Shown here: positions 1,946 through 49,248 of the stretch, piece by piece
How the letters are laid out: every line of letters starts with the position of its first letter
Position numbering within the stretch: the first letter of the stretch is position 1
Source of the DNA: Octopus bimaculoides
Lineage: Eukaryota
Assembly: GCF_001194135.2 (NCBI RefSeq)
Contig: NC_068984.1
Location: forward strand, 3,091,548 to 3,145,309
Reading direction: 5' to 3'
DNA: 53,762 nucleotides
Made by a program: the position numbers and the translations under genes
Notes under the pieces: model-generated
Databases searched by the model: none
The model's input: the letters and a program-made list of their open reading frames with translations, nothing else
What the model was told of the DNA's origin: nothing

Positions 1946-2335
1946 AACAGAAAATATCTCAAAGTGTACCATTTTAGGTGAGGTTTCAATATTTGAAAGG
2001 TTAGATCCGAAATAGATGTTTCATGTTTTACTTAAACCAAACAACCACTTACGTTATTAGTCCAACTCCCACCTGTAAGACTTAATTGATTAAAAAGTTA
2101 ATGAAACAAAGGCTACTTAATTATTGTGAGTATATTAAATCAACAACACTACATGAGTCACCTCGGGGTTAATGGTTTTGTAGAGACAGGATTCCAGTAC
2201 TGACCGAATTGGTTTCATTCTTCAACTTTCTGAACACTTCTGCTTTTACTGTTCGCTCGTCTCTGACTTGATCAAATGAATACCAGTCATATACTGAGAT
2301 TAAATCCACATCCTTCACTATTTTCACTATATATT

Positions 2336-2456
2336 GGCGCAAGCATGGCTGTATGGTAAGAGGTTTGCTTTCCAACCCCATGGTTTCGGGTTCAGTCCCA
2401 GACCGACCAAAGTCTTGTGAGTGAATTTAATAGACGGAAACTAAAAGAAGCCTGTC

Positions 2457-3261: not shown

Positions 3262-3474
3262 TCTTTTCTACTCTAAGCACAAGCCCGAAATTTTAGGGTA
3301 GGGGACCAGTCGATTAGATCGACCCCAGTACGCAACTGGTACTTATTTAATCGACCTCGAAAGGATGAAAGGCAAAGTCGACCTCGGCGGAATTGGACTC
3401 TGAACGTAGCGGCAGACGAAATACCGCTAAGCAATTCGCCCGGCGTGCTAACGTTTCTGCCAGCTCGCCGTCTT
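3262..3474 (-). mobile_element. SINE family B, near full length
   Basis: Reverse complement begins ggcgagctggcagaaacgttagcacgccgggcga; near-identical to copies at 23031 and 24661. Confidence 0.93.
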
Positions 3475-3634
3475 AAACTCATCTCTATAACACACCAATT
3501 CTACAAATAACTCTCAATTGGTAGTCATATTTCTACCAAGAATGATGATGTTTGTGCTTCATAGATATAATCAGAATAAAGCGGGAACCTAATTAAAGTT
3601 GTTTCCCTTAGTTGACAAAATAATTTAAATAGTA

Positions 3635-7199: not shown

Positions 7200-7412
7200 G
7201 GGAGGCGAACTGGCAGAATGGTTAGCACACCAGGCAAAATGCTCAGCGCCATTTCGTCCGTCTTCATGTTCTGAGTTCAAATTCGGCCGAGGTCGATTTT
7301 GCCTTTCATTCTTTCGGGGTCGATAAGATAAGTATCAGTTGAGCCCCGGGGTCGAAGTAATCGACTTAGCCTCTCTCTCGAAATTTCTGCTCTTGTTCCA
7401 AACCTTGAATCT
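7200..7412 (+). mobile_element. SINE family B
   Basis: ggcgaactggcagaatggttagcac...gagttcaaattc...gtcgattttgcctttcatt...gtcgaagtaatcgac. Confidence 0.9.
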
Positions 7413-8084
7413 AACATTACGTGTAAGGTGACATTCGTGCCTGGGGTCTATTCCAAGTTGTAAACTGCACTAGCTCATAGCACCTACTTATAGATAGGTA
7501 GAGTGAGCCAGTGAGAGTGAAATAATATTGTTAAAGACAGAATGCATTGTTTATGGCAAGACTGGCAACATCGAAGCTTAAACTGAGAGTTCCCGGTTCA
7601 ATAGAAATGGCTGGTCGTATTTCTCTGCTGCGCGATAAGATATAAAAAAAGGAATAGTGGTAGGGGTGGGGGAGAAACAAATAGTTTGTAGAGTTTTAGA
7701 GGTGTATATGAATGTATGTGTGTATAAAGTATTTATGCGTATGCATACACACACACACACACATTGATACGTATGTTTATATGTGTGTGTATATATGTAT
7801 AACTGTGAGTGCGTGTTATTCGGGGCTACATTTCCAGTTTGTGCCTCTTTGTGGTTTGTTACAGACGAGGTTTAATGGAATTTTCCCTCTCTTTCTATTC
7901 TTCTTGCAATTACGTCTTCTCACTCCTCCTTCTCCCCTCGTTCTCCCTTTCTCTTCTCCCTTTCTCTTTTCCTCCTTTCCTCTTCTTTCACTTATTTCGC
8001 CATAAACTTTTTTTTACATTCAGTTTTATCGTTTCAATCACATAAAAATTTGATGTTTTCTTCCCTACTTCAGTTCATTTACAA

Positions 8085-8146
8085 TTTCTTCTTTTTCTTC
8101 TTCTTCTTCTTCTTCTTCTTCTTCTTCTTCTTCTTCTTCTTCTTCA
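8085..8146. repeat. (TTC)n microsatellite
   Basis: Read directly. Confidence 0.95.
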
Positions 8147-8302
8147 CATTCACACTGGCACATACACAATGCTCTCTCTCTCTCTCTCTCTCACATATCT
8201 CTGTGTGTTTCTATTCTCACCTATGTATGTTTACGTAATTCTCATGTGCATACACACACACACACCACACACGCACGCACGCACACATGCACAGTATTTA
8301 TA

Positions 8303-8470
8303 GGTGCAGGCGTGGCTCTATGGTAAGAAGCTTGCTACCCGATTACATGGTTCCAGGTTCAGTCCCACTGCGTGGTACCTTGGACGAGTGTCTTCTGTAG
8401 CCTCTGGCCGACCAAAGCCGTGTGAGTGGATTTGGTCGAAAGAAGAAAAAAAAAATGAAAGAAGCCTGTC
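8303..8470 (+). mobile_element. SINE family A, 5' half
   Basis: ggtgcaggcgtggctctatggtaagaagcttgc...ggttcagtcccactgcgtgg. Confidence 0.9.
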
Positions 8471-9048
8471 TTGGTCTTTGTGTGTTATTTTAAATGGCTT
8501 ATAAACANNNNNNNNNNNNNNNNNNNNNNNNNNNNNNNNNNNNNNNNNNNNNNNNNNNNNNNNNNNNNNNNNNNNNNNNNNNNNNNNNNNNNNNNNNNNN
8601 NNNNNNNNNNNNNNNNNNNNNNNNNNNNNNNNNNNNNNNNNNNNNNNNNNNNNNNNNNNNNNNNNNNNNNNNNNNNNNNNNNNNNNNNNNNNNNNNNNNN
8701 NNNNNNNNNNNNNNNNNNNNNNNNNNNNNNNNNNNNNNNNNNNNNNNNNNNNNNNNNNNNNNNNNNNNNNNNNNNNNNNNNNNNNNNNNNNNNNNNNNNN
8801 NNNNNNNNNNNNNNNNNNNNNNNNNNNNNNNNNNNNNNNNNNNNNNNNNNNNNNNNNNNNNNNNNNNNNNNNNNNNNNNNNNNNNNNNNNNNNNNNNNNN
8901 NNNNNNNNNNNNNNNNNNNNNNNNNNNNNNNNNNNNNNNNNNNNNNNNNNNNNNNNNNNNNNNNNNNNNNNNNNNNNNNNNNNNNNNNNNNNNNNNNNNN
9001 NNNNNNNNNNNNNNNNNNNNNNNNNNNNNNNNNNNNNNNNNNNNNNNN

Positions 9049-9779
9049 CTCTCTCTCCCTCTCTCTCTCCCTATCTCTCCCTCTCTCTCCCTCTCTCTCT
9101 CTCTCTCTCCCTCTCCATCTTCCTCTTTCCTTCCTCTCCCATCTCCCCCTCCCTCTTTCCAATTCTCACGCACGCAATCACTCTTCTCTGTTGTTCTAGC
9201 CTTCCCAACCCCCTCCCATTTTCGAACATCACCTCCATATCTCTCTCTCCCCCCACCGAATACCACCACCACCACCACCACCACCACCATTCCTACAACT
9301 ATCGACATATTGAGTTATGCCCAACAACGTAAGTTCCAATCCATCACGGTTGTCCATCAACCACATTCCATTGTTCACGAGAGAAACGCTAGCATCACCA
9401 CCGCCATCACCACTACCACCACTACCACCACTGCCACCACTACCACCACCATTGTCCCCACCACTGCCACCCAACAACAACCAACCATTAGTCACCAGCA
9501 ACCACCACCATCTTCATCACCACCATCATATTGATACCATCGTTCCCATCACCATCACCAACACCGACACTATGCAGCCCCCTCCCCCCCGTTGTTACTT
9601 GGGTCCACCTCGAGTCATTACAACCCACCCACCACACCTTTACCCTTACTGCCGCGGATTCTATCACAATCCACCATCACCCCCACCACCACCACCAATA
9701 CTATCCACAACAACAACAATACTATGCAAAATTACCACACAACGTCCCATCAACACTCCCCCACCCAACTATCACATTT

Positions 9780-9813
<34 letters not shown>

Positions 9814-10070
9814 CCACTATCATCACTATCCCTGCTACTATTGACTTTTTCACCACCACCTCCTCCTCTTCCTCCACCACCACTACCACCATCATTACCA
9901 AAACCATACGCACCACCATCGCCACCAACACAACCACTCAAGGCACGACCGCCACCTCCACCCCTACACAACAATAACAACAACAAAAACAACAACGCGC
10001 CCGCCCTCTTTCTTCCTCTACCAACCAACCAACCAACCAACGGTGCAGCCTTCAGAAATTCTTTCTGCTA
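9049..10070. repeat. C-rich low-complexity mosaic of (CT)n, (ACC)n, (CAT)n, (AAC)n
   Basis: Shifting short tandem motifs; several frames open on both strands. Confidence 0.85.
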
Positions 10071-10189
10071 ATAAAATAAGAGAATTGAAATTAGGTAAGA
10101 ATTAGCGAAATAACGGAACGGTGTGAGTGGAACCATGGTGATGGAGGTGAGTGTAAGTGGAGCCGAAGTGTTGGAGGTAATAATAATAG

Positions 10190-10915: not shown

Positions 10916-11990
10916 ACCATACAAGATCTTCCTGAATTCTAAGGGCAAGTGTCCTCCCCAATACTTGTTCTGCGACTCACAGTTGTATACTTAGACCGGT
11001 GCCATCCACTATTGCCATTTTTGCCACTCTCATAATAGTCGAAAATCAGCACTTGTGTGTGCGCACCAGAAATTCTTGTCTCGCTAATGTCAACTATATC
11101 TATGTCGAGCGACCTGAGAACGTTGAGCAAGTGAACTTGCTTCCAAACTGATCCCACACTCTACTCTCTGCACAGTCATGTTCGTTGGAGAAGAAAAGGG
11201 GAATCTCGCTCACCATTTTCTCGAAGCTCGGATGTTCAGGACCTTTTTTCGCTATCATCTTTTTTAAAATACCCAACACTAGCAGGAATTTTCCTCCAAT
11301 TATTTTATACTCATCTTTCGGGACTTTGAGAATGAAATCCTAAACCCCCACCCCCCGAGCGCCCCTCTGTCGTAATTTTATTTTTACTATCATTTGAGTA
11401 TTCCATCAACTCACTTTTGCTTTTATTTACAACAGTGAAATTGATGGAGACTTGTTGTTTTTGTAGTCTCAGTTTTGGTCGTTGTGTATGGTCTCAGACT
11501 GTGGTTTTTGTGTTGATGTTATTGTGTCCTCGGAGTGGGGCCCGGTATCACCCACCTCTTTCACTTTTCCCCTTTGGGGACTATTTACCATGTTTCAGCC
11601 CGTTCTTCTTTTTCCATATCACTCACCCATGTCAGGAGACGGTGAAGTCTTAGTCTGTGGGTAGAGCATACTTCTCCGGACCACTTCGTGCCTACCTCTT
11701 GCTTGCGTTTACTCCTTTTTAACCCTACCTTTCTTGTCCCAGACAGTTCAATATCCTCCTTGTTACCACCAGAGGTGTAGTGATGGTACTAACGCACGTA
11801 TCTTCTGACCATCTTTATGCTGGAGATGTGGACCTCTCAGTTTCTTGTCGAATGTCGGCCCTCGGTTGTCACTGAGGAGGGCGCCATTTCGTTTGCTTCC
11901 ACCCGGTTACTCTCCAAACTGCTTCCTTTGGAAAGAGCTGCAGCAGCATCTTTGCTCATATTCTCTGCAGCCTGTTGATGGTGGCGTTGT
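10916..11990 (-). mobile_element. Decayed Tx1/L1-clade LINE: start of ORF2 (APE endonuclease) plus probable ORF1 tail
   Basis: WKQVHLLNVLRSLDIDIVDISETRI at about 11150-11070 resembles the APE N-terminal D-I-x-x-x-S-E-T motif; the ORF1 assignment of 11420-11990 is weak. Confidence 0.7.
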
Positions 11991-14244: not shown

Positions 14245-14330
14245 CGCCATACAAGATGAGGACAAATATCCGTCAAATGTAAAAAATGTAAATAATGTAC
14301 ATAGTTCTTCATCTCTCAAATATAGAACTG
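14245..14330 (+). mobile_element. Fragment of the Penelope-like repeat also at 31957-32118
   Basis: acaagatgaggacaaatatccgtcaaatgtaaaaaatgtaaataatgta is nearly identical to the reverse complement of 31960-32010. Confidence 0.8.
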
Positions 14331-14331
14331 T

Positions 14332-14515
14332 CTTTAGGGATAGTTCCCAATGCACCTATAATTACTGGAATACATTTTACTCACATTTTCCATAGTCTCT
14401 GTAATTCAATCGTTTCGTCCTGGTACTTGGCTATTTTCTCTTTACCTTCTCATATTGACTTTCTCATCATTTGGGACTGTAAAGTCAATTATCTGGCACT
14501 TTCTTTCCTCTTTGT

Positions 14516-14550
<35 letters not shown>

Positions 14551-14733
14551 GCAGCTGCTGCTGCTAAATCGGGCCTTCTGGCTTGTATTATTCTGTCCGT
14601 CTGACTGTCGAAGTCCTATACATCTTGTACTTCTTTATTTCTAGTACTTTACTAGGTTCATGTTCATACCATTTATCAGTATGGTCAAATCCTAGCTTTC
14701 TACATGACTCCCAGTGGGTTACTCTTCCTATTA
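14332..14733 (-). mobile_element. Decayed R4/Dong-clade non-LTR retrotransposon, restriction-like endonuclease region
   Basis: Frameshifted translation HWESCRKLGFDHTDKWYEHEPSKV / DFDSQTDRIIQARRPDL / DKEERKCQIIDFTVPND / KEKIAKYQD / LWKM*VKCIPVIIGALGTIPK, including the RPD...D..K motif. Confidence 0.88.
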
Positions 14734-14785
14734 TCATCATTGTTGTTGTTGTTGTTGATGTTAATTCAGTATGAACTAAAACCTG

Positions 14786-14866
14786 TTCTTTTTTTCTTTT
14801 CCAGGTGAGTAAATGCCGATTCTGTAACCTTGTTAACAAATAGGTGTTAATGACATCGCGGTAAGA
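14786..14866 (+). promoter_or_regulatory. Candidate recursive splice site with 56-nt RS-exon
   Basis: TTCTTTTTTTCTTTTCCAG|GTGAGT at 14804/14805; second donor GTAAGA at 14861. Confidence 0.45.
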
Positions 14867-15719
14867 CCTCCTCTCTGTCCTTCATTTTCAGATTTATTCT
14901 ATCTATTTCTAGCAAATATTTTATTATTACTCAACTCCCATTATAACTTTGCTATTTTCACTGATCTTGTGACAAGAAATCAATATTTATCATCAATCAA
15001 TGAGTAATCGATGTCAAACAAACTTGAAAAATTCTCTTACATAAACACTTTAACAAGTTTAGTGAGTTAGTATTGGCTATCGATTAGCTGCAGATTGATT
15101 GAGAAATGTAGAACTAACTCTAATATACGTTAATAAATTTATTTAAATATCGAAATGTTAAACCGTCTGGAATTCGAATACTGACACGACCCTTAATAAA
15201 TAAATAAATAAAAAATGCTTGCGATGGAAGCAACGCTTGATCTGGTTCTAGAATTGTTGCGGCGTCCAGATATTCCTTTCAACTCTAAGTCTGAGGAATT
15301 GGAAACTAAAGAAACTGTAAATAACTCTAACAGTTACAGATTCAGTCTTATTCCGTGAAATCCAGACTGGCATAAATGATTTATCTGAGTCTTCCTTCAT
15401 CTTTCTCTAAATGTGTGTGTGTGTGTGTGGGGGGGGAGTGTGTGTGTGTGTGTGTGTGTGTGTGCTTGTGTAGATAGATCAATAGATAGGCAGACATGCA
15501 AGTAGATAGGTAAGAGATTGGTAAATAGATTGTTAGGCACATATTTATTGATAGATAGATAGATAAATAGATAAATCGGTAGATAAATGGATGGGTAGCT
15601 AGATCGATAATTGGACAGGCAGATCAATAGGTAATAAACAGAGATAAATATCCAGACAAATGAGTATGAAGAATATTAGGTTGGTCGATCGATTGATAAA
15701 CAGATAGAGAGAGAGTTAG

Positions 15720-15777
15720 ATAAATGGATAGACAGACAGACAAACAGACAGACAGATAGACAGACAGACAGACAGAC

Positions 15778-15846
<69 letters not shown>

Positions 15847-15848
15847 GA
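15720..15848. repeat. (AGAC)n/(AGAT)n compound microsatellite
   Basis: Read directly. Confidence 0.95.
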
Positions 15849-18599
15849 TCCTATTCTTTCTAAAACGAGTAGCTCTCTTCACCATTTATTTAAAACTGAA
15901 ATCATGTATTGCAATCTTTCGCTCAGGTTGTATTGTCGCAAGTAATACCTATAATATTAAATTGAAATTCTATATTGTATAGAGATTTATATCAATATTG
16001 AAATCAATCATTTCTAAATATCTAACTTTAATAATACCAAACATGATTGCTTTATATCGAATTAGACTATTTCCCAATTCATATATTTCCCCAAAGAATA
16101 AAAAGAAGTAGAAACACATTTTTCATAAAGTTATAACGTCTACATTCGATTAAGTTTCTTTTAAATATCAGCGGAGTCACCAGCGGAGAAAATTAGATGA
16201 AGTTTTTAGTAAAATTATATTTATAATCCATTGACTGACTAAATTTCGAAGTCCGTTCTGTTTCTATGTCTCTTTATTCCTGAATTATATAATCGTTGCT
16301 GTTGGTCAGACTGATGCTCATCAGACTTATGGTTACGTCAGTTACAACATACGAACGGAGATAAGTGTCTGTTGCTGCTGAAAACTATGGATCTGTTGTT
16401 AAGAATATTATTTGCCATATTTGAATACTTCTGGCGATCGTCGTTAAGAGATAGTTAATATTGTTTCCATGGGATTGTCTGTAGATGAGTTCAAATACCG
16501 TCGAATTCACTTCTCCCACTCCTAGGACCGATACAATAAGGTCCCCTCCCGTTCATGGTTGTTGGACTTGTACCTAAATGGAAAAGAATTATGTTGTCTG
16601 TGATCTTTGATGTTATTTCAAGTTGGATTTTCCTAACCACGTGCATTCTCCATCTATCAGTTATTTTTCATTTCTTGTACTCTATATATCCCCACTTTCA
16701 CAGCGCATGCGCATACACACACACACACATACACACACACACACACACGCATAAACACACACACACACACACGCACAAATATACTTAGGTGTTATATTTA
16801 TTCCACTGTTTATAGCTGTTTCCATAATATATGGTGGATAAATCATATAACTGAAGACATGGAAGAAAGCAATAATACTGTCATATTTATTACATAATCT
16901 TTATTATATAATAATTCATCCCCACCCCCAAATAATCTAGTCATAACCCACGTGACTAAATAAATACATTATTTATTTCATGTTGTGTCTGTAAGTTGAC
17001 ATTAGCTCTGCCTTTCTATTCCTTATATTTTTACAGGGAAACAATTTTCTAGCCACATTGCTTATAGTACATACAATATGGTTGTAATATAATGCAATAC
17101 AATTTAATAAAATAAAATTTACATTGGTATATGAGGAATTGTTCCACTCGCAATTTTCCGATGTCTAAACGTATCCGATGCAGTTATGATGATACATATT
17201 TCCGGAAATGTAACTCACATAGCTGTCCAATAATATCAAAACACTTGCTCCATTAGAACTACATACAAGATAGTATCCAATGAAGCATGCAGAACTTGAG
17301 TGGTTTTCTTAAATTCAAAAGCAGGAATGCCTCGATACATCTAAAAATAACGAAGCCATAAATGCAACATTCCGATTAAAATTCCTTCGAATTCCCATTC
17401 AGCCGAGCAGATACTGTTATATATAACAACGTACAGAAACAATAGTATTGCGATTTCAGCTGTAATTCTTCGATTTATAAGTTGAATGCTTTTAATTTGA
17501 TAACAACAGCATATATTTATGTAGAAATATTGAAAAGACCATCTCAAAATAGAAAAAAGGCCGGTTGAAATGGAATTGTTGAAGGCCAATACCTCCATGA
17601 ATCAGCACTTGCCTTAAAACGTTGTTTTCTCAACAGTAACAATAAATTAGGATACTTTTATAATTAAGACTGATTACTTTAATGATTTTGACTGAAATCA
17701 GTTAAATGTAAATTGGATTGATATCTGCCAAGCTCTGAGAATTGATATGAATAGCAAAAACTGTAAAAACAAGCAATTTTCTTAAGAATTCACAAGTTTC
17801 ACCTTTTAAAGATACAATAGTGTTTCACACATAGGTAATATGGTGAATGTGTAACATAGGCACACACACATTTATATATATATATATATATATATCGATA
17901 TACAGCAGTCATGCTGCAGAACGGTTCAGTGAACAGAGAGTAAACGTCCGCAGTTGTGTTGAAATCAAACATGGCTCCTTCATGTCTTTCGCTCACTCGG
18001 TCACCAAGTCCGTTTCACACGGATCTCAGTAGTTATTAACAAAATTTATTCTAATTCATATAAAATTATGTCGTTCTTCTTGTTATTGTAATTGATATTA
18101 AAGTAGCAAATTGGTTGATGGGAGTGAGCTGGTGTCACCATTTGTGCCAACTGAACCGGCGGCGCCACAAGTCTGAGACGGTGAGAAGACAACATCTTTC
18201 TGAATATTAATTATTAAATTACTTATACCCATCGAAGACTGCGTTATTGTTATTGAGTTTGTTTCCATAAAGCAGTCGCTAGTAAACCTTTCTAATCCCA
18301 TCCCATATCAACTGAAATCGTCTGATATGATTATACAAATATATATATATNNNNNNNNNNNNNNNNNNNNNNNNNNNNNNNNNNNNNNNNNNNNNNNNNN
18401 NNNNNNNNNNNNNNNNNNNNNNNNNNNNNNNNNNNNNNNNNNNNNNNNNNNNNNNNNNNNNNNNNNNNNNNNNNNNNNNNNNNNNNNNNNNNNNNNNNNN
18501 NNNNNNNNNNNNNNNNNNNNNNNNNNNNNNNNNNNNNNNNNNNNNNNNNNNNNNNNNNNNNNNNNNNNNNNNNNNNNNNNNNNNNNNNNNNNNNNNNNN

Positions 18600-24660: not shown

Positions 24661-24865
24661 ATTCTTTTCCACTCTAGGCACAAGGCCCGGATTTTCGGGG
24701 AGGGGGTCAGTCGATTAGGTCGACCCCAGTACGCAATTGGTACTTAATCTATCGATCTCGAAAGGATGAAAGCAAAGTCGACCAAGGTGGAATTTGAACC
24801 CAGAACGTAAAGACAGATGAAATACCGCTAAGCATTTCGCCCGGCGTGTTAACGTTTCTGCCAGC
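24661..24865 (-). mobile_element. SINE family B, head at gap edge
   Basis: Near-identical to 3262-3474. Confidence 0.93.
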
Positions 24866-29704: not shown

Positions 29705-29865
29705 CATACGACGGGCTTCTTTCCCTTTCCGTCAACCAAATCCATTCACAAGGCTTTAATCGGCCCAGGGCTATAACAGAAGACACTTACCCTTAGTGCC
29801 ACGCAGTGGGACTGAACCCAGAACCATGTGGTTGGGAAGTAAGCTTCTTACCACACAGTCAAGCC
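29413..29865 (-). mobile_element. SINE family A, near full length
   Basis: Both halves and internal (CA)n. Confidence 0.92.
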
Positions 29866-31365
29866 AAGCCTGTGTTCAATCGTTTTGTAGTGTGGTAGAT
29901 ACATATCTACCCAATCATCTACCCAATCATCTACCCCTCTGCCCCCTCTCTATCCAACCATCCACACATCCAGTTATCCACCAATCCATCCGAACATCCA
30001 TTGATCCTTCCCCCTCTCTCTTCCTCCTTTCCTTCATCCATGCCTCTAACCCTCCATCCATTCAACCAAACATCCGTCCGCATCTTCCACATTTTAAGCA
30101 TTGTTCTTTATCTAATTCCTCATCAGGAATCATCATTATCAGGGTTCCTAATGTCTTTTACGATTCTGTGCCAGTTTCCAAAATCTATATTTCATGGATG
30201 GAAACACAATGATATTTATTGATGATGAAATCGATCTCACAGGGAAATTAATTAACGAAATCTCAATTAAACATTATAGATTAAAGCAGAAACGCTTGAA
30301 CCGCAACTATGTCACTCAGTAATCTATACCCCCCCCACACACACACACATACACATGTATACACACACACGCACACACACATATATATATACATCTCTGT
30401 ACACATCTATATATATATGCATATATATATACACATCTATTCAAATATATATACAAACAAACATTTCTACGCACACACACACACACACACACACAAACAT
30501 ATACATACATACATACATACACACACACAAACACATACATACTTACATGCATGCATGCATGCAACATTTATAAAAATTTATATCTCGCATATTTAACGCA
30601 AATAAAGCTTTAGCAAATGGCTAATAACAACGGATGCGTTGAAATTCGAATTTAGAAACGTGATGTAAAATATCACTGAAGCGAAAATATGAACAGCATA
30701 TTCTCGCTAGCCATATTGAAAATATGTGCGAAGATGTTATATATTCCCCTGGTCTTTAGTAATGTCTCTTTTACCTCTAAAATTATAAAAATAAACACCT
30801 GTACATTCTTGCCATCGACGGGAGGCAAAGAATCTTTGTGAGAAAATGTTATGTCTCATGCTACTGCTATCTAGCACCTTCGGATGATCTCTACTCGACT
30901 GCTCCTCGTCAGCTATTCAACCACGACTAGACTACCTCTATTTATATGTTTTGGGCGATGCTACTTTTTCACTTAGGGGCGTCGACACAACAGAAAACAA
31001 GTGGTTTTCTTTTACGTCAGTTATGTCAGGAAACAAAATATATCGTAACCAGTTGAAATATGGACGATTCCAATTCTAAAAATCTTTATGCTGAAAAGAG
31101 CTTTTATTTGGTTATTAATACTAATATTCTGAAAAGGGTTCTTGTGGTAAGTATCTTATACACAACGCCATGTCACGTGTCAGGTTTGTTTCGTTTGTGG
31201 TGTTCCCTCTTTACGGCATGCAGCGGAGATAAAGCAATGGCTGTGCTATAAAAGATAAAACGGAGATAAAGTGTGATATAAAGCGGTAGATTAGACATGT
31301 AAATAGATAGACAAGAGATTGATTGAGTAGGAGAGAGAGAGTGAGTAGGGAAGAGAGAGAGAGGG

Positions 31366-31845: not shown

Positions 31846-31956
31846 GGAGGTGCGCATGGCTTGGTGATCAAGGTGTTGCACTCACGACCGTAAGATTGCG
31901 GTTTCGATTACTGACCAGGCGATGCTTTGCGTTCTTGAGTAAAACAATTCATTTCA
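31846..31956 (+). mobile_element. SINE family C 5' part (tRNA-like head), truncated
   Basis: A-box-like tggcttggtg, B-box-like ggtttcgattac, then gttcttgagtaaaaca shared with 36571-36863. Confidence 0.7.
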
Positions 31957-32118
31957 TTTACATTATTTACATTATTTACATTTGATGGATATTTATCCTC
32001 ATCTTGTTTGTTGTTAACACAACGTTTCGTCTGATATACCCTCCAGCCTTCATCGGGTGTCTTGGGGAAATTTCGAACCTGGTTTCTCATTCCTCAGGTA
32101 TTTCTCGATGGTTCATAT
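31957..32118 (-). mobile_element. Penelope-like terminal repeat fragment
   Basis: Carries a minimal hammerhead motif and shares sequence with 14245-14330. Confidence 0.7.
32016..32061 (-). ncRNA. Minimal type I hammerhead ribozyme motif, degenerate or variant
   Basis: GACAC CCGATGA A GGCTG GAGGGTATAT CAGAC GAAAC GTT GTGTT: stem I, core, stem II with one mismatch, palindromic AACGTT stem III. Confidence 0.7.
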
Positions 32119-32420
32119 TGTTCCACTCCACTCAACTGGCAAAAATGAAGAACCTCGCAACAGACCAGCGTTTCGTCTAAGTGGAGACAAGGTGATATAT
32201 GCGTCACAGGATCTGGAAGACCAGCATTGTAAGCCTATGGCTCTGGAAGGACCTCTGATCCTTTTATAGAAATAAAAATTGAAACACAAGATGACATTGG
32301 AACAAAACTTGAAGATTAGCTTTTTATTTATAGCCGAGAAGCAACTTGAGTGAGCCACTGATGTAGCTTGGGCAATAAATGAAATCGTATGTATGTATGT
32401 ATGTATGTATGTATGTATGT
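32119..32420 (+). mobile_element. Unclassified retroelement 3' end (AATAAA then (GTAT)n)
   Basis: ggcaataaatgaaatc directly followed by (GTAT)n at 32387-32420. Confidence 0.4.
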
Positions 32421-32700
32421 TTGAATGTGGTGTGTGCCAGAGGGTTTGCAAATCCAATGGGGGTCTTAAAAGACATGTTAGGATCCACAATGAGCAGAAC
32501 TTACTTACAGGTATTGGTAGTGCAAATCAGAGGTGCAATCTGTGTGGGTGTTTTTTCAAAACACTGTCTGGTTTAAAAAGCCACATCAGACGCCATGAAA
32601 GGGCTAAGGTGTAGGTGCAGGAGGTGGTCAAACTCTGTTTAAGGAGTAGACAGCCACCATGTATGTATGTATGTATGTATGTATGTATGTTTATGTATTT
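32420..32700 (+). mobile_element. 5'-truncated LINE 3' end, probably RTE clade, encoding two C2H2 fingers
   Basis: FECGVCQRVCKSNGGLKRHVRIH...CNLCGCFFKTLSGLKSHIRRH, stop at 32612-32614, 45-nt UTR, (TGTA)n tail; no TGEKP linker. Confidence 0.7.
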
Positions 32701-34500: not shown

Positions 34501-35159
34501 NNNNNNNNNNNNNNNNNNNNNNNNNNNNNNNNNNNNNNNNNNNNNNNNNNNNNNNNNNNNNNNNNNNNNNNNNNNNNNNNNNNNNNNNNNNNNNNNNNNN
34601 NNNNNNNNNNNNNNNNNNNNNNNNNNNNNNNNNNNNNNNNNNNNNNNNNNNNNNNNNNNNNNNNNNNNNNNNNNNNNNNNNNNNNNNNNNNNNNNNNNNN
34701 NNNNNNNNNNNNNNNNNNNNNNNNNNNNNNNNNNNNNNNNNNNNNNNNNNNNNNNNNNNNNNNNNNNNNNNNNNNNNNNNNNNNNNNNNNNNNNNNNNNN
34801 NNNNNNNNNNNNNNNNNNNNNNNNNNNNNNNNNNNNNNNNNNNNNNNNNNNNNNNNNNNNNNNNNNNNNNNNNNNNNNNNNNNNNNNNNNNNNNNNNNNN
34901 NNAAAAGCACACACTCCCATCATTCACCCCAGTCGCTGTTTATCAGAAACTACCTTTGCTGTTCCACTTTAAGTACTTTTATGGAAATAATACCATTACA
35001 TATCATACATTATGAAGCATAGCTTGGAACTCTTTCGATCTTACAAATACTAGAACAACCACCGCCACCATCACAGCTCAGAAATAATATTCTATTCTAC
35101 TCTAGGCTAACGTTTCTGCCAGCTCGCCGCGTTGCTCAGCAATAATATTAACAGCAGGT

Positions 35160-35630
35160 TCCGAGAAAGGTTCCGAGAGGTGGTTATTCAATTTGACAAC
35201 CGAGCAAATGCCAGTATATATTGTGGTGATTCGACTTCTGAAGACGGGACAGAAACCGACAGCTTTTAGGACAGACACCAGATAGCGATGGTCCACCCTG
35301 TCAAAAGCTTTGGACTGGTCTAAACTGATCTGAAGTTTTCAATCACATCCTCTTTGTTCGAATCCTTTCTCAGCAGCGTCACCACTCCCAGACTCATACG
35401 ATTGGGAATGCTTCCTGTCTGTTACCAAGAGCAGTAGACAGCTGCTAAAATCGGTGCAAACAAGTCCGACATGTGAGCATATAGTTCATAGGGCAGACGA
35501 TCCAATCCCTGGCGATTTGAGCTCCACGCAGCGGCCCAGCATGTCTTCCGCTTCCTCCACTGAAATCGGCTTCTCGCAGCACCCTCGATATCCTTGTCCG
35601 ATTGGTTCGGCATATCTTCGACGTAAGCAT
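35160..35630 (-). mobile_element. Decayed Tx1/L1-clade reverse transcriptase fragment with internal deletion
   Basis: GLDRLPYELYAHMSDLFAPILAAVY...IP and LDQSKAFDRVDHRYLVSVLKAVGFCPVFRSRI; the D-x-x-KAFD motif of non-LTR RT. Confidence 0.88.
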
Positions 35631-35644
35631 CACTACTACTACTG

Positions 35645-35701
<57 letters not shown>

Positions 35702-35728
35702 ATAATAATAATAATAATAATAATAATA
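35631..35728. repeat. (ACT)n(AAT)n microsatellite
   Basis: Read directly. Confidence 0.95.
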
Positions 35729-36087
35729 TCTAAAAACACATTGTCGTTGAAAAACAGGAAAAGAAGGACAGCAATAATAAAAATACGAAGAAGAATGTTA
35801 ACTGGGAGAAAAAGTGCGGAAATCGTTTGTATGGAGAAGGAAGAAGCCGTAACATTTCAGTTGAATGATTCTATTGTCGCAAAATCGGTGGAAGTTACGT
35901 GTGTATAACATGGTTAACAAAGTGAAATATAGTCTTTAGATTTCCCGCAAACAATTTGCAGTCGATTTTATTAACATAAAAAGTATGACGTGGAAGTATC
36001 GCAATAGAAATGAAAGGAATTTATGCAGATTTAGGTTTTAGTGCTTACATATCATCTTGTACGTGTGTTTGTGTGTGAGCACATATA

Positions 36088-39806: not shown

Positions 39807-39964
39807 GATGGGCTTCATTCAGTTTCCGTCTATCAAATCCACTCACAAGGCTTTTATCAACCCAAGGTTATTGCAGAGGACACTTACCTAATGTGCCACG
39901 CAGTGGAACCGAACTCGGAACTCTGTGGTTGAGAAATAAGCTTCTTACCATGCAGCCACGCCTG
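39632..39964 (-). mobile_element. SINE family A with deletion in the 3' half
   Basis: Head, internal (CA)n(TA)n and part of the 3' half. Confidence 0.9.
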
Positions 39965-40289
39965 TTACCTACTAATACTAATAATAGTAACATTTATCAG
40001 CCTTAATGTATTCTAGACACCCATTTGATTATATAGACATCTCCATGATGACTGTTACAAATACACACACACATACACTCTGTCTCTCTCTCACGCACAC
40101 ACACACACACACACACACGCACACACAACACACACACTCACACGCACACGCACACACACACACCTATCTAGATAAGAAACGTGTACAGTGGGGGATCCTA
40201 TCCGGTAACAGATAGCGATAAACGAGGACTGTTTCATTCATTTTTAACAAAGAAGGGATGTGGTTTTGTTAAGGTGACAACGGAAGGAG

Positions 40290-41385: not shown

Positions 41386-42002
41386 ATCGAGAAAATAACA
41401 TTCTTCCACTGCTCTAGGGATCAATTTTGTAGGTTTTTACTCCTCCCTAAACGCTTTGCAACGTTTGTTTTTGAAAGTAGTGGTTTTCTGATTGCAGCCC
41501 TCCGGTCAAATCCAGCTTTGTGTAGCTCCCGGCGAACAGTTTTTGTGGAAACTGAGTTCTCGAAGTGGTCATTAAGATCTGCAGTAATTTTGGGAGCTGT
41601 ACTTTTGTGATCCTTTGTAATAATTCGCGTAAGAGTCCGACGGTCCCTATCTGAAAGATTTGGTTTTCTTCCGGAGTTTTGTTTCGACAAGGAGGTTCTT
41701 TCTCTCTTTCTCAAAGGCTGCCATTACTTTCGACACAGTACTTCTTGGTACGCCAAACATTTCGGCTGTTTTTGTTATGCTAGCGCCTGCCATACGAGCA
41801 CCAACAATTTGAGCTCTTTCAAAGTCCGATAGATCTGTCATTTTAATGAATTTTAATTACCTTTTTCTGGTGGTATCTGAAAAGAAATAGTAATTGTAGC
41901 AAAACATATTAAGCAACGCTAATAATAAATTAAAAAAAACTTAAAAAATAAACAAGCTTTTGACGGTTTTATAAATATTTCAAAATTATGATGCTATGAT
42001 GC
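41385..42002 (-). mobile_element. Tc1-family transposon 5' part, frameshifted transposase
   Basis: ATG at 41841 MTDLSDFERAQIVGARMAGASITKTAEMFGVPRSTVSKV, then SGRKPNLSDRDRRTL...TVRRELHKAGF..RAAIRKPLLS, then N*SLEQWKNVIFS; truncated at the first catalytic D. Confidence 0.93.
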
Positions 42003-46637: not shown

Positions 46638-46791
46638 GACAAGCTTCTTTCGGTTTCCGTCTACTAAATTCACTCGCAAGGATTTGGTCGACCCGAGACT
46701 ATAGCAGAAGAGACTTAATCAAGGTACCACACATTGAGACTGAACCCGGGACCATGTGGCTGGAAAGCAAACTACTTACCACGAAGCCACG
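46638..46791 (-). mobile_element. SINE family A, 5' half
   Basis: tttccgtctact.aattcactc.caagg.tttggtcg.cccgag.ctatagcagaag...gaacccgggaccatgtgg. Confidence 0.9.
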
Positions 46792-47592
46792 TCTATATAT
46801 GCATGCATGCATATATNNNNNNNNNNNNNNNNNNNNNNNNNNNNNNNNNNNNNNNNNNNNNNNNNNNNNNNNNNNNNNNNNNNNNNNNNNNNNNNNNNNN
46901 NNNNNNNNNNNNNNNNNNNNNNNNNNNNNNNNNNNNNNNNNNNNNNNNNNNNNNNNNNNNNNNNNNNNNNNNNNNNNNNNNNNNNNNNNNNNNNNNNNNN
47001 NNNNNNNNNNNNNNNNNNNNNNNNNNNNNNNNNNNNNNNNNNNNNNNNNNNNNNNNNNNNNNNNNNNNNNNNNNNNNNNNNNNNNNNNNNNNNNNNNNNN
47101 NNNNNNNNNNNNNNNNNNNNNNNNNNNNNNNNNNNNNNNNNNNNNNNNNNNNNNNNNNNNNNNNNNNNNNNNNNNNNNNNNNNNNNNNNNNNNNNNNNNN
47201 NNNNNNNNNNNNNNNNNNNNNNNNNNNNNNNNNNNNNNNNNNNNNNNNNNNNNNNNNNNNNNNNNNNNNNNNNNNNNNNNNNNNNNNNNNNNNNNNNNNN
47301 NNNNNNNNNNNNNNNNNNNNNNNNNNNNNNNNNNNNNNNNNNNNNNNNNNNNNNNNNNNNNNNNNNNNNNNNNNNNNNNNNNNNNNNNNNNNNNNNNNNN
47401 NNNNNNNNNNNNNNNNNNNNNNNNNNNNNNNNNNNNNNNNNNNNNNNNNNNNNNNNNNNNNNNNNNNNNNNNNNNNNNNNNNNNNNNNNNNNNNNNNNNN
47501 NNNNNNNNNNNNNNNNNNNNNNNNNNNNNNNNNNNNNNNNNNNNNNNNNNNNNNNNNNNNNNNNNNNNNNNNNNNNNNNNNNNNNNNNNNNT

Positions 47593-48340: not shown

Positions 48341-49248
48341 CAGGGTGCGGTGAATATACTGTCATCTAAATTACGCAAAAACGAAAATAACACTGATATC
48401 TCATTTTAACAGATATATTTACCAAAATTATATAAAAATACCCTGAAATACTAAAGAGTAAATGTATTCAATAAAATCGTCATTGGCTGCACCACGGCTT
48501 CCAGACGACTTTGGAATCTCCTGCAACTCTTTTGAACAGTCTCCTCGTTAAGTTGGTGAATGCTGTCGTAATCCTTGCCTTCAGTTCATCTTTGATGTTA
48601 CAAGGAGTTTTGTTGGTCTCTCGCTCAACTGCACCCCACACATAATAATCAAGGGGGTTGCAGTCTGGAGAGTTAGGTGGCTAAATGTTAGGGGTGNNNN
48701 NNNNNNNNNNNNNNNNNNNNNNNNNNNNNNNNNNNNNNNNNNNNNNNNNNNNNNNNNNNNNNNNNNNNNNNNNNNNNNNCTTGTGTGACATGGTGCAGAG
48801 TCCTGTTGCTAAATAGAGGGTCTTCTAGCAGCCACCCTCTTGACCCAGGGCAGCATTACCTCCTCCATGCACTTGATGTAGGCCTCCGTGCTGAGTCTGA
48901 GACCCTGCTGGAAGATGAATGGAGGCATAACGTCACCATCACTTGTGACCACTTCAAACACCATGAAGTTGACTGGATGTTTGATATTTATTACTCTCGG
49001 TACATGTCCTCAGATTGATAGCCAAAGACACTGAAATGTTCGTATTGGCGCTTCCAGTGCAAATGCCAAGCAGTAGAGCATGTCGTTTCCAAATTTCTGG
49101 CAGAGTGAATTGCATCATGGTGCTGTTTTTCTCAAAGACGGTACCCAGCTGACCTACTATACTATGTAGTCGACAAAATCAAAAGCAAACAATGCGCATG
49201 CGTGAGATTAAAAATATAAAATGGTGACAATTTACCCATCACATCCTG
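48341..49248 (-). mobile_element. Tc1/mariner, maT (DD37D)-like, internally deleted, degenerate TIRs
   Basis: TIRs CAGGGTGCGGTGAATATACTGTCA / CAGGATGTGATGGGTAAATTGTCA, TA at 49249; KHPVNFMVFEVVTSDGDVMPPFIF...QQDSAPCHT and *PPNSPDCNPLDYYVWGAVERETNK; D-D spacing hidden by a gap. Confidence 0.9.

What the first reader, a model, noticed from the sequence alone, without database searches (positions are those of the whole stretch)
14770..14866. Candidate recursive splice site (ratchet point) with a poison RS-exon
Plus strand: branch-like ACTAAA near 14775, 15 straight pyrimidines, CAG, then GTGAGT immediately (14805). A second donor CG|GTAAGA follows 56 nt later (14861). The 56 nt have stops in all frames: TAG 14841, TGA 14806, TAA 14810 (all seen). 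This is the architecture established for recursive splicing in long Drosophila and vertebrate introns. I know of no description in cephalopods. It would imply the window is part of a very long plus-strand intron, which fits the lack of CDS (inference). It is one motif, so chance or an ordinary acceptor is possible.
Basis: partly seen in the sequence, partly recalled or inferred. Interest (0 to 1): 0.75.

Follow-up and report, generated by a model that had tools for sequence, protein, structure and literature searches.

The report
Candidate recursive splice site, unproven
A very strong "acceptor-then-donor" splicing signal followed 56 bases later by a second donor really is there and is far stronger than chance predicts. 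It looks exactly like the stepping-stone sites used to remove giant introns in flies and vertebrates, but nothing available here can show that it is transcribed or used.

Summary
The motif is real. On the plus strand there is a branch-like CTAAA (A at 14779), a 17-nt pyrimidine run (14786-14802), CAG|GTGAGT with the junction at 14804|14805, and a second donor GCG|GTAAGA at 14861, 56 nt later. It is the only such site in the window. With a generic splice-site matrix the joint acceptor+donor score is 30.4 bits; the next best AG|GT on either strand scores 18.7. Null models expect 0.00 to 0.03 such sites per window. Every sequence-level feature of a Drosophila or vertebrate recursive splice site with a cryptic RS-exon is met, including TT at -5/-6, a roughly 50-nt RS-exon, a regenerated donor stronger than the downstream donor, and an out-of-frame body with stops.

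The features that decide function could not be tested. No host gene or coding exon was found, the window shows no strand asymmetry, no orthologous or paralogous sequence could be retrieved, and no RNA data are available. The cephalopod origin was not verified. "Stops in all frames" is weak evidence, because GTGAGTAA itself supplies two of the three.

Verdict: a good motif-level candidate for a known mechanism, with about 0.4 probability of being a working ratchet point. The rivals are an ordinary short non-coding exon or unused sequence. Interest is modest.

The parts
14775..14780 (+). Branch-point-like ACTAAA. The CTAAA core places a candidate branch A at 14779, 25 nt upstream of the acceptor G.
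   Evidence: It matches 4 of 5 positions of yUnAy. Alternative TTAAT has its A at 14764 (-40). No AG occurs between 14770 and 14802 (an AG-exclusion zone).
14786..14801 (+). Polypyrimidine tract TTCTTTTTTTCTTTTC (16 Y; 17 counting the C of CAG), with TT at positions -6/-5.
   Evidence: Only 20 of 96,824 positions (both strands) have a 14-nt tract score as high as this one. TT at -5/-6 is present in 196 of 197 Drosophila ratchet points.
14802..14804 (+). CAG acceptor; the junction lies after 14804.
   Evidence: the generic acceptor matrix scores 17.2 bits, the highest in the window.
14805..14810 (+). GTGAGT: a consensus donor directly abutting the acceptor. This would be the regenerated (ratchet) 5' splice site.
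   Evidence: the donor scores 13.3 bits in its genomic context, and the joint score of 30.4 bits compares with a next best of 18.7.
14805..14860 (+). 56-nt putative cryptic RS-exon. Its length is not a multiple of 3, it has stops in all frames, and its GC is 39%, against 34% upstream and 29% downstream.
   Evidence: As an exon-like unit it scores 25.9 bits, against a next best of 20.8 on either strand.
14861..14866 (+). Second donor GCG|GTAAGA, the RS-exon 5' splice site needed for exon definition.
   Evidence: it scores 8.7 bits, weaker than the GTGAGT donor.

Best explanation
This is a plus-strand exon-definition unit that acts as a recursive splice site (ratchet point) with a cryptic 56-nt RS-exon.

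Inferred mechanism:
1. While a long plus-strand intron is being transcribed, U2AF/U2 bind the CTAAA branch site, the 17-nt pyrimidine tract and the CAG.
2. U1 binds the GTAAGA donor at 14861, which defines the interval 14805-14860 as an exon.
3. The upstream exon is ligated to 14805. The junction then reads exon|GTGAGT, a consensus donor.
4. That donor out-competes the weaker GTAAGA, so the second step removes the 56 nt together with the rest of the intron. No trace is left in the mRNA.
5. If the downstream donor were used instead, a frame-shifting, stop-containing exon would be included.

What is shown: the sequence anatomy, its statistical rarity and its uniqueness in the window. What is inferred: transcription of the plus strand, use of the site, and the order of the steps.
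For: - The sequence is read directly.
- There is one strict match in the window against 0.00 expected in shuffles.
- The joint matrix score is 30.4 bits against a next best of 18.7. As an exon unit it scores 25.9 against 20.8.
- The order-5 Markov expectation is 0.0014 per window for a score of at least 30 bits. Requiring a downstream donor as well gave 0 in 700 simulations.
- An empirical estimate (observed tract frequency multiplied by observed core-motif frequency) gives 6e-4 to 0.03 per window.
- The published family features are all matched. These are a tandem acceptor|donor, a cryptic RS-exon of about 50 nt with a downstream donor, a body that is out of frame, and the rule that the stronger donor wins (PMC8605326). 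Also matched are a prominent pyrimidine tract and TT at -5/-6 in 196/197 ratchet points (bioRxiv 10.1101/006163).
- Higher GC downstream than upstream of a recursive 3' splice site has been reported (PMC13105047). Here the values are 39% against 34%.
Against: - No host gene, exon or promoter was found in the 53.8 kb.
- There is no plus/minus asymmetry of 5'ss-like motifs (40 vs 39) or of AATAAA (75 vs 61, slightly the wrong way).
- No orthologue or paralogue is available for a conservation test.
- There are no RNA data.
- The organism is unknown, and recursive splicing has not been described in its presumed clade.
- The splice-site matrices are generic and recalled from memory, not trained on this species.
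- At genome scale, tens to about a hundred equally good sites would arise by chance, and the number of windows the first stage screened is unknown.
Confidence: 0.4

Rival explanations
1. Unused sequence. A T-rich low-complexity run happens to abut CAGGTGAGT in DNA that is intergenic, or antisense to a gene, or sense but ignored by the spliceosome. The T-run could, for example, be the antisense of an A-rich retroposon tail; it sits beside (TTG)n and (TAC)n microsatellites.
For: - Microsatellites lie 25-290 nt upstream, and the window holds 134 pyrimidine runs of at least 10 nt.
- No evidence of plus-strand transcription was found.
- The order-5 null gives 0.0014-0.03 per window depending on stringency. 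Across a gigabase genome that means tens to more than a thousand chance sites.
- The site was chosen by eye after the window had been read, so the selection is post hoc.
Against: - For this one window the full architecture is about a 1-in-1000 event or rarer.
- The score gap to the next best site is 12 bits.
- The extra downstream donor, the AG-free zone, the branch-like CTAAA at -25 and TT at -5/-6 all agree with a working site.
- The region is not part of any repeat detectable in the window.
Confidence: 0.35
2. An ordinary short exon (14805-14860) of a non-coding RNA or a UTR, or a regulated poison cassette exon, that is included in mature RNA. On this reading its GTGAGT start is incidental and is not re-spliced, or is repressed as in annotated RS-exons.
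For: - It has the same acceptor and donor and the best exon-like unit score in the window.
- In mammals, expressed RS-exons far outnumber fully suppressed intronic ratchet points, with about 6,400 potential cases against nine definite ones (PMC8605326). Hundreds of annotated RS-exons are kept in the mRNA because the exon junction complex represses re-splicing (PMC6224609).
Against: - An exon starting with a perfect GTGAGT is rare, roughly 1 in 1000 by composition (my estimate).
- The first donor is stronger than the second (13.3 vs 8.7 bits), which by the donor-competition rule favours skipping.
- There is no coding potential and no homologue.
Confidence: 0.2
3. An ordinary 5' splice site. An upstream exon ends at 14804, and GTGAGT is simply its donor. 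One candidate is the ATG-initiated, signal-peptide-like ORF 14704-14808. On this reading the pyrimidine run is exon sequence.
For: ORF 14704-14808 reads MTPSGLLFLLSSLLLLLLMLIQYELKPVLFFFSR and runs into CAG|GTGAGT.
Against: - The hydrophobic stretch comes from a (TTG)n microsatellite.
- The best acceptors for an internal exon ending at 14804 score no more than 7.1 bits.
- This reading does not explain the acceptor-grade tract, the AG-free zone or the second donor.
Confidence: 0.05

Closest known systems
Drosophila intronic ratchet points with cryptic RS-exons (Ubx, kuz, Bx, luna; Hatton 1998, Burnette 2005, Duff 2015, Joseph 2018, Joseph & Lai 2021)
   Same: - (Y)n-CAG|GTRAGT with a prominent pyrimidine tract and TT at -5/-6.
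- A short RS-exon of about 50 nt ending in a second, weaker donor.
- An RS-exon body that is out of frame and carries stops.
   Different: - No host intron is known, whereas the fly sites lie in introns of 11-133 kb.
- No conservation or RNA evidence is available.
Vertebrate RS-sites in long neuronal genes (Sibley 2015; e.g. CADM2, cadm2a) with PTC-containing RS-exons
   Same: A YAG|GT site defined through an RS-exon, competition between the regenerated donor and the downstream donor, and PTCs introduced on inclusion.
   Different: The vertebrate sites were found from junction reads and saw-tooth profiles; this one rests on sequence alone. The motif here is closer to the very strong fly consensus.
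Annotated RS-exons whose re-splicing is repressed by the exon junction complex (Blazquez 2018)
   Same: The exon begins with a donor-like GTRAGT, so ligation recreates a 5' splice site.
   Different: Those exons are coding and constitutively included. This 56-nt stretch has no coding potential.
Pseudoexons, decoy exons and exonised antisense retroposon tails
   Same: An intronic acceptor+donor pair with a strong tract that need not serve any function. The tract could derive from an antisense A-rich tail.
   Different: No repeat membership was detectable here. Pseudoexons do not normally carry a consensus donor exactly at the acceptor.

Membership tests
Recursive splice site (ratchet point) with cryptic RS-exon | 3' and 5' splice-site consensus juxtaposed around AG|GT | tested here: met
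   TTCTTTTTTTCTTTTCCAG|GTGAGT. The joint score is 30.4 bits, the top of the window by 12 bits.
Recursive splice site (ratchet point) with cryptic RS-exon | Prominent pyrimidine tract with TT at -5/-6 (196 of 197 fly ratchet points) | tested here: met
   for the site; for the criterion.
Recursive splice site (ratchet point) with cryptic RS-exon | Downstream donor about 50 nt away that defines an RS-exon | tested here: met
   GCG|GTAAGA lies 56 nt downstream and scores 8.7 bits. Criterion.
Recursive splice site (ratchet point) with cryptic RS-exon | Regenerated donor stronger than the RS-exon donor, so that the exon is skipped | tested here: met
   13.3 vs 8.7 bits with a generic matrix. The true -3..-1 bases would come from the unknown upstream exon, so this holds only for the intronic part (GTGAGT vs GTAAGA).
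Recursive splice site (ratchet point) with cryptic RS-exon | RS-exon body out of frame or carrying premature stops | tested here: met
   56 nt with stops in all three frames. This is weakly informative: 19.7% of 56-mers here do the same, and the motif itself supplies two of the stops.
Recursive splice site (ratchet point) with cryptic RS-exon | Lies in the sense strand of a long intron (more than about 10 kb) | tested here: inconclusive
   No exon, host gene or strand asymmetry was detectable in the window. No annotation of the source genome was reachable.
Recursive splice site (ratchet point) with cryptic RS-exon | Core motif strongly conserved while the RS-exon body drifts | not testable with these tools
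   No orthologous or paralogous sequence was found. The collections hold no close relative of this genome (best transposon matches 69-78% identical).
Recursive splice site (ratchet point) with cryptic RS-exon | RNA evidence: junction reads from an upstream exon to the site, a saw-tooth read density, and lariats to and from the site | not testable with these tools
Ordinary cassette, UTR or lncRNA exon | Flanked by a functional acceptor and donor and present in mature RNA | tested here: inconclusive
   The splice signals are present. Inclusion cannot be tested.
Transposon-derived exonisation (antisense A-tail becomes the pyrimidine tract) | Flanking sequence belongs to a repeat family | tested here: not met
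   No second copy of 14600-15400 exists in the window other than microsatellites, and there is no Pfam or protein match. Genome-wide copy number is untestable here.

The most novel reading that the evidence does not exclude
Recursive splicing through a cryptic RS-exon also operates in a lophotrochozoan (cephalopod) giant intron, using the same strong motif grammar as Drosophila. That would make it an ancestral bilaterian solution to long introns rather than a feature of insects and vertebrates only.
Probability: 0.3. Interest if true: 0.5.

Novelty: new member of a known kind. Interest (0 to 1): 0.3.

Why it matters
If the site is used, it would extend a mechanism documented in insects and vertebrates to a third major animal lineage with very large, intron-rich neural genes. 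It would also give a concrete site for RT-PCR, lariat and minigene tests. The held literature contains no paper pairing recursive splicing with octopus, and only incidental mentions alongside cephalopods or molluscs. The field already regards the mechanism as unified across metazoans, so a single new site would be an expected extension, not a surprise. As it stands this is one sequence motif without expression data.

Tried and rejected
- Repeat membership: BLAST of 14255-16500 against the window found only microsatellites and a 55-bp repeat (14248-14302 / 31956-32010) that stops about 500 nt before the motif.
- Structured RNA: there are no Rfam or tRNA hits anywhere in the window.
- Related sequences through proteins: the minus-strand ORF spanning the site has no homologue. 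Ten local ORFs are not in the protein collection, though that look-up may have failed because the references included the stop codon.
- Organism and host gene through transposon ORFs: the Tc1 fragment's best hit is 78% identical, and named hits are a mantis shrimp and fish. A composite query of ten ORFs (transposon-like fragments plus ORFs flanking the site) mostly hit a pseudoscorpion, plus unnamed contigs. The contig look-ups gave ENA ERZ21867824, GCA_024449705.1 and GCA_041192925.1, which I could not map to species. All three homologue searches are now used.
- Exact 22-mer scan of metagenome contigs: 0 hits.
- Strand-of-transcription signals (5'ss-like sites against poly(A) signals): no asymmetry.
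- Coding exons: six-frame ORFs of at least 55 codons showed only transposon remnants and low-complexity sequence, by eye and by Pfam on ten of them. The larger set of at least 40 codons was prepared, but I did not run it through Pfam because the expected yield was low.
- The 'poison exon' argument was rejected as evidence.

Full report
**What is there.** On the plus strand, 14770-14866 reads TATGAACTAAAACCTG-TTCTTTTTTTCTTTTCCAG|GTGAGTAAATGCC...CATCGCG|GTAAGA.
- ACTAAA is at 14775-14780. Its CTAAA core puts a candidate branch A at 14779, 25 nt before the acceptor G.
- There is no AG between 14770 and 14802.
- The uninterrupted pyrimidine run is 14786-14802, with TT at -6/-5.
- CAG is at 14802-14804 and GTGAGT at 14805-10.
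- The second donor GCG|GTAAGA has its GT at 14861-62, which leaves a 56-nt interval.

The only correction is that the run has 16 pyrimidines before CAG, not 15.

**Is it more than chance?**
- The strict pattern (eleven Y, then AG|GTRAGT) occurs once in the window, on the plus strand. It was expected 0.00 times in 100 dinucleotide-preserving shuffles.
- A looser regular expression is expected 0.000, 0.007 and 0.027 times per window under Markov models of order 1, 3 and 5.
- With generic metazoan splice-site matrices, which I recalled from memory and did not train on this species, the acceptor scores 17.2 bits and the abutting donor 13.3. The sum of 30.4 compares with a next best of 18.7 for any AG|GT on either strand. 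As an exon-like unit (acceptor plus a donor 25-300 nt downstream), 14805-14860 scores 25.9 against a next best of 20.8.
- Under an order-5 null trained on the window itself, which is conservative because it includes the site, a joint score of at least 30 bits is expected 0.0014 times per window. Requiring also a donor of at least 8 bits 25-120 nt downstream gave 0 in 700 simulations.
- An empirical estimate multiplies the observed frequency of tracts this good by the observed frequency of YAGGTRAGT. It gives 6e-4 to 0.03 per window.

So for this window the motif is an outlier at roughly the 1e-3 level. Over a gigabase genome, tens to about a hundred chance sites of this quality are still expected. 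I also do not know how many windows the first stage screened.

The 'poison' argument adds little. In this window 19.7% of all 56-mers have stops in all three frames, and GTGAGTAA itself supplies two of the three.

**Context.** The window is a gappy draft of an AT-rich, microsatellite-rich eukaryotic genome, with 15 N runs totalling 5,142 N.
- It has no Rfam or tRNA hits.
- The only protein-like sequences I found are transposon remnants. There is a frameshifted Tc1/mariner HTH at 41424-41856(-), with PF01498 at 1.6e-15. There are reverse-transcriptase bits near 35.1-35.9 kb(-), transposase C-terminal bits at 48.5-49.0 kb(-), and a C2H2 pair at 32354-32611(+).
- The stretch 14600-15400 is single-copy within the window. 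Only (CTA)n at 14516-14550 and (TTG)n at 14740-14762 lie upstream. A 55-bp repeat at 14248-14302 does not reach the motif.
- No candidate host exon stands out on either strand.
- 5'ss-like motifs (40 vs 39) and AATAAA (75 vs 61) show no strand bias that would suggest plus-strand transcription.

**Related sequences and organism.** Attempts to reach orthologues or annotation failed.
- The minus-strand ORF spanning the site has no homologue.
- Local ORFs are not in the protein collection.
- A 22-mer across the junction has no exact match in metagenome contigs.
- Transposon queries gave best hits of only 69-78% identity, in unnamed contigs, a mantis shrimp, fish and a pseudoscorpion.

**Comparison with the known family.** Drosophila ratchet points have several published features:
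- They are tandem acceptor|donor sites with a cryptic RS-exon of about 50 nt and a downstream donor.
- The stronger of the two donors wins (PMC8605326).
- They lie in introns of 11-133 kb (bioRxiv 10.1101/006163).

Vertebrate RS-sites follow the same RS-exon logic, with PTC-containing RS-exons (PMC5126111; PMC6224609). The present site meets every one of the sequence-level criteria. The location, conservation and RNA criteria are untestable here.

In the held library no paper pairs recursive splicing with octopus. The pairings with cephalopod or mollusc terms are incidental mentions.

**Most likely mechanism (inferred).** The unit is recognised by exon definition, with U2AF/U2 at the tract and CAG and U1 at 14861. 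An upstream exon is ligated to 14805, and the junction recreates exon|GTGAGT. That donor beats GTAAGA, so the 56 nt are removed with the remainder of the intron. I put this at about 0.4.

**Rivals.**
- Unused sequence arising by chance or as a relic, about 0.35.
- An ordinary short non-coding or poison exon that is actually included, about 0.2.
- An ordinary donor of an exon ending at 14804, about 0.05. This is suggested by the microsatellite-derived, signal-peptide-like ORF 14704-14808. It is disfavoured by the poor upstream acceptors.

**Verdict.** If true, it is a new member of a known kind in a new lineage. Interest is modest (0.3) until the host gene is identified and RNA evidence is obtained.

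Noticed in passing
window 41424-41856 (-): A frameshifted Tc1/mariner transposase N-terminus, with HTH_Tnp_Tc3_2 at 1.6e-15 and HTH_23 in a second frame. It is 75% identical at DNA level to an ENA contig (ERZ21867824 ctg122566l).
   Followed up: partly
window 48483-49009 (-): Two ORF fragments resembling the C-terminal DDE_3 part of a Tc1-like transposase ('PPNSPDCNPLDYYVWG...'). They have no Pfam hit on their own but gave 37-46% matches to pseudoscorpion transposases.
   Followed up: partly
window 35105-35900 (-) and 10942-11160 (-): LINE remnants. There is a weak RVT_1 hit, and matches of 69-75% amino-acid identity to unnamed reverse-transcriptase proteins. An endonuclease-like 'LNVRSL..DIVDISETR' ORF was recognised by eye only.
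   Followed up: partly
window 32354-32611 (+): A short ORF ending in two C2H2 zinc fingers (PF00096 at 1.1e-8), preceded by microsatellite-derived sequence. It may be a transposon tail or a gene fragment.
   Followed up: no
window 2172-2426 (-), 29760-29900 (+), 39809-40003 (+), 46754-46810 (+); also 3276-3500, 7280-7447, 24749-24860: At least two short interspersed repeat families recur in both orientations. They are visible as the recurring pseudo-peptides 'GTEPxTMWLxSKLLTTQ' and 'GRNVxTPGExLSGISS'. No tRNA or Rfam match was found.
   Followed up: no
window 8000-10100: A strongly C-rich low-complexity block (GC skew -0.61) gives long proline/threonine/histidine-rich pseudo-ORFs on the plus strand. 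It is interrupted by a 541-N gap.
   Followed up: no
window 14248-14302 and 31956-32010: A 55-bp inverted repeat at 91% identity that contains an (AAATGTAAA)n-like core. It lies next to the 952-N gap upstream of the finding.
   Followed up: yes
window 14704-14808 (+): An ATG-initiated 34-codon ORF with a signal-peptide-like leucine run runs into the CAG|GTGAGT junction. The leucines come from a (TTG)n microsatellite, so this is probably coincidental.
   Followed up: partly
whole window: 15 runs of N totalling 5,142 bases, most of them flanked by CA/TA/GATA microsatellites. These are assembly gaps at simple repeats, so distances across them are unreliable.
   Followed up: no
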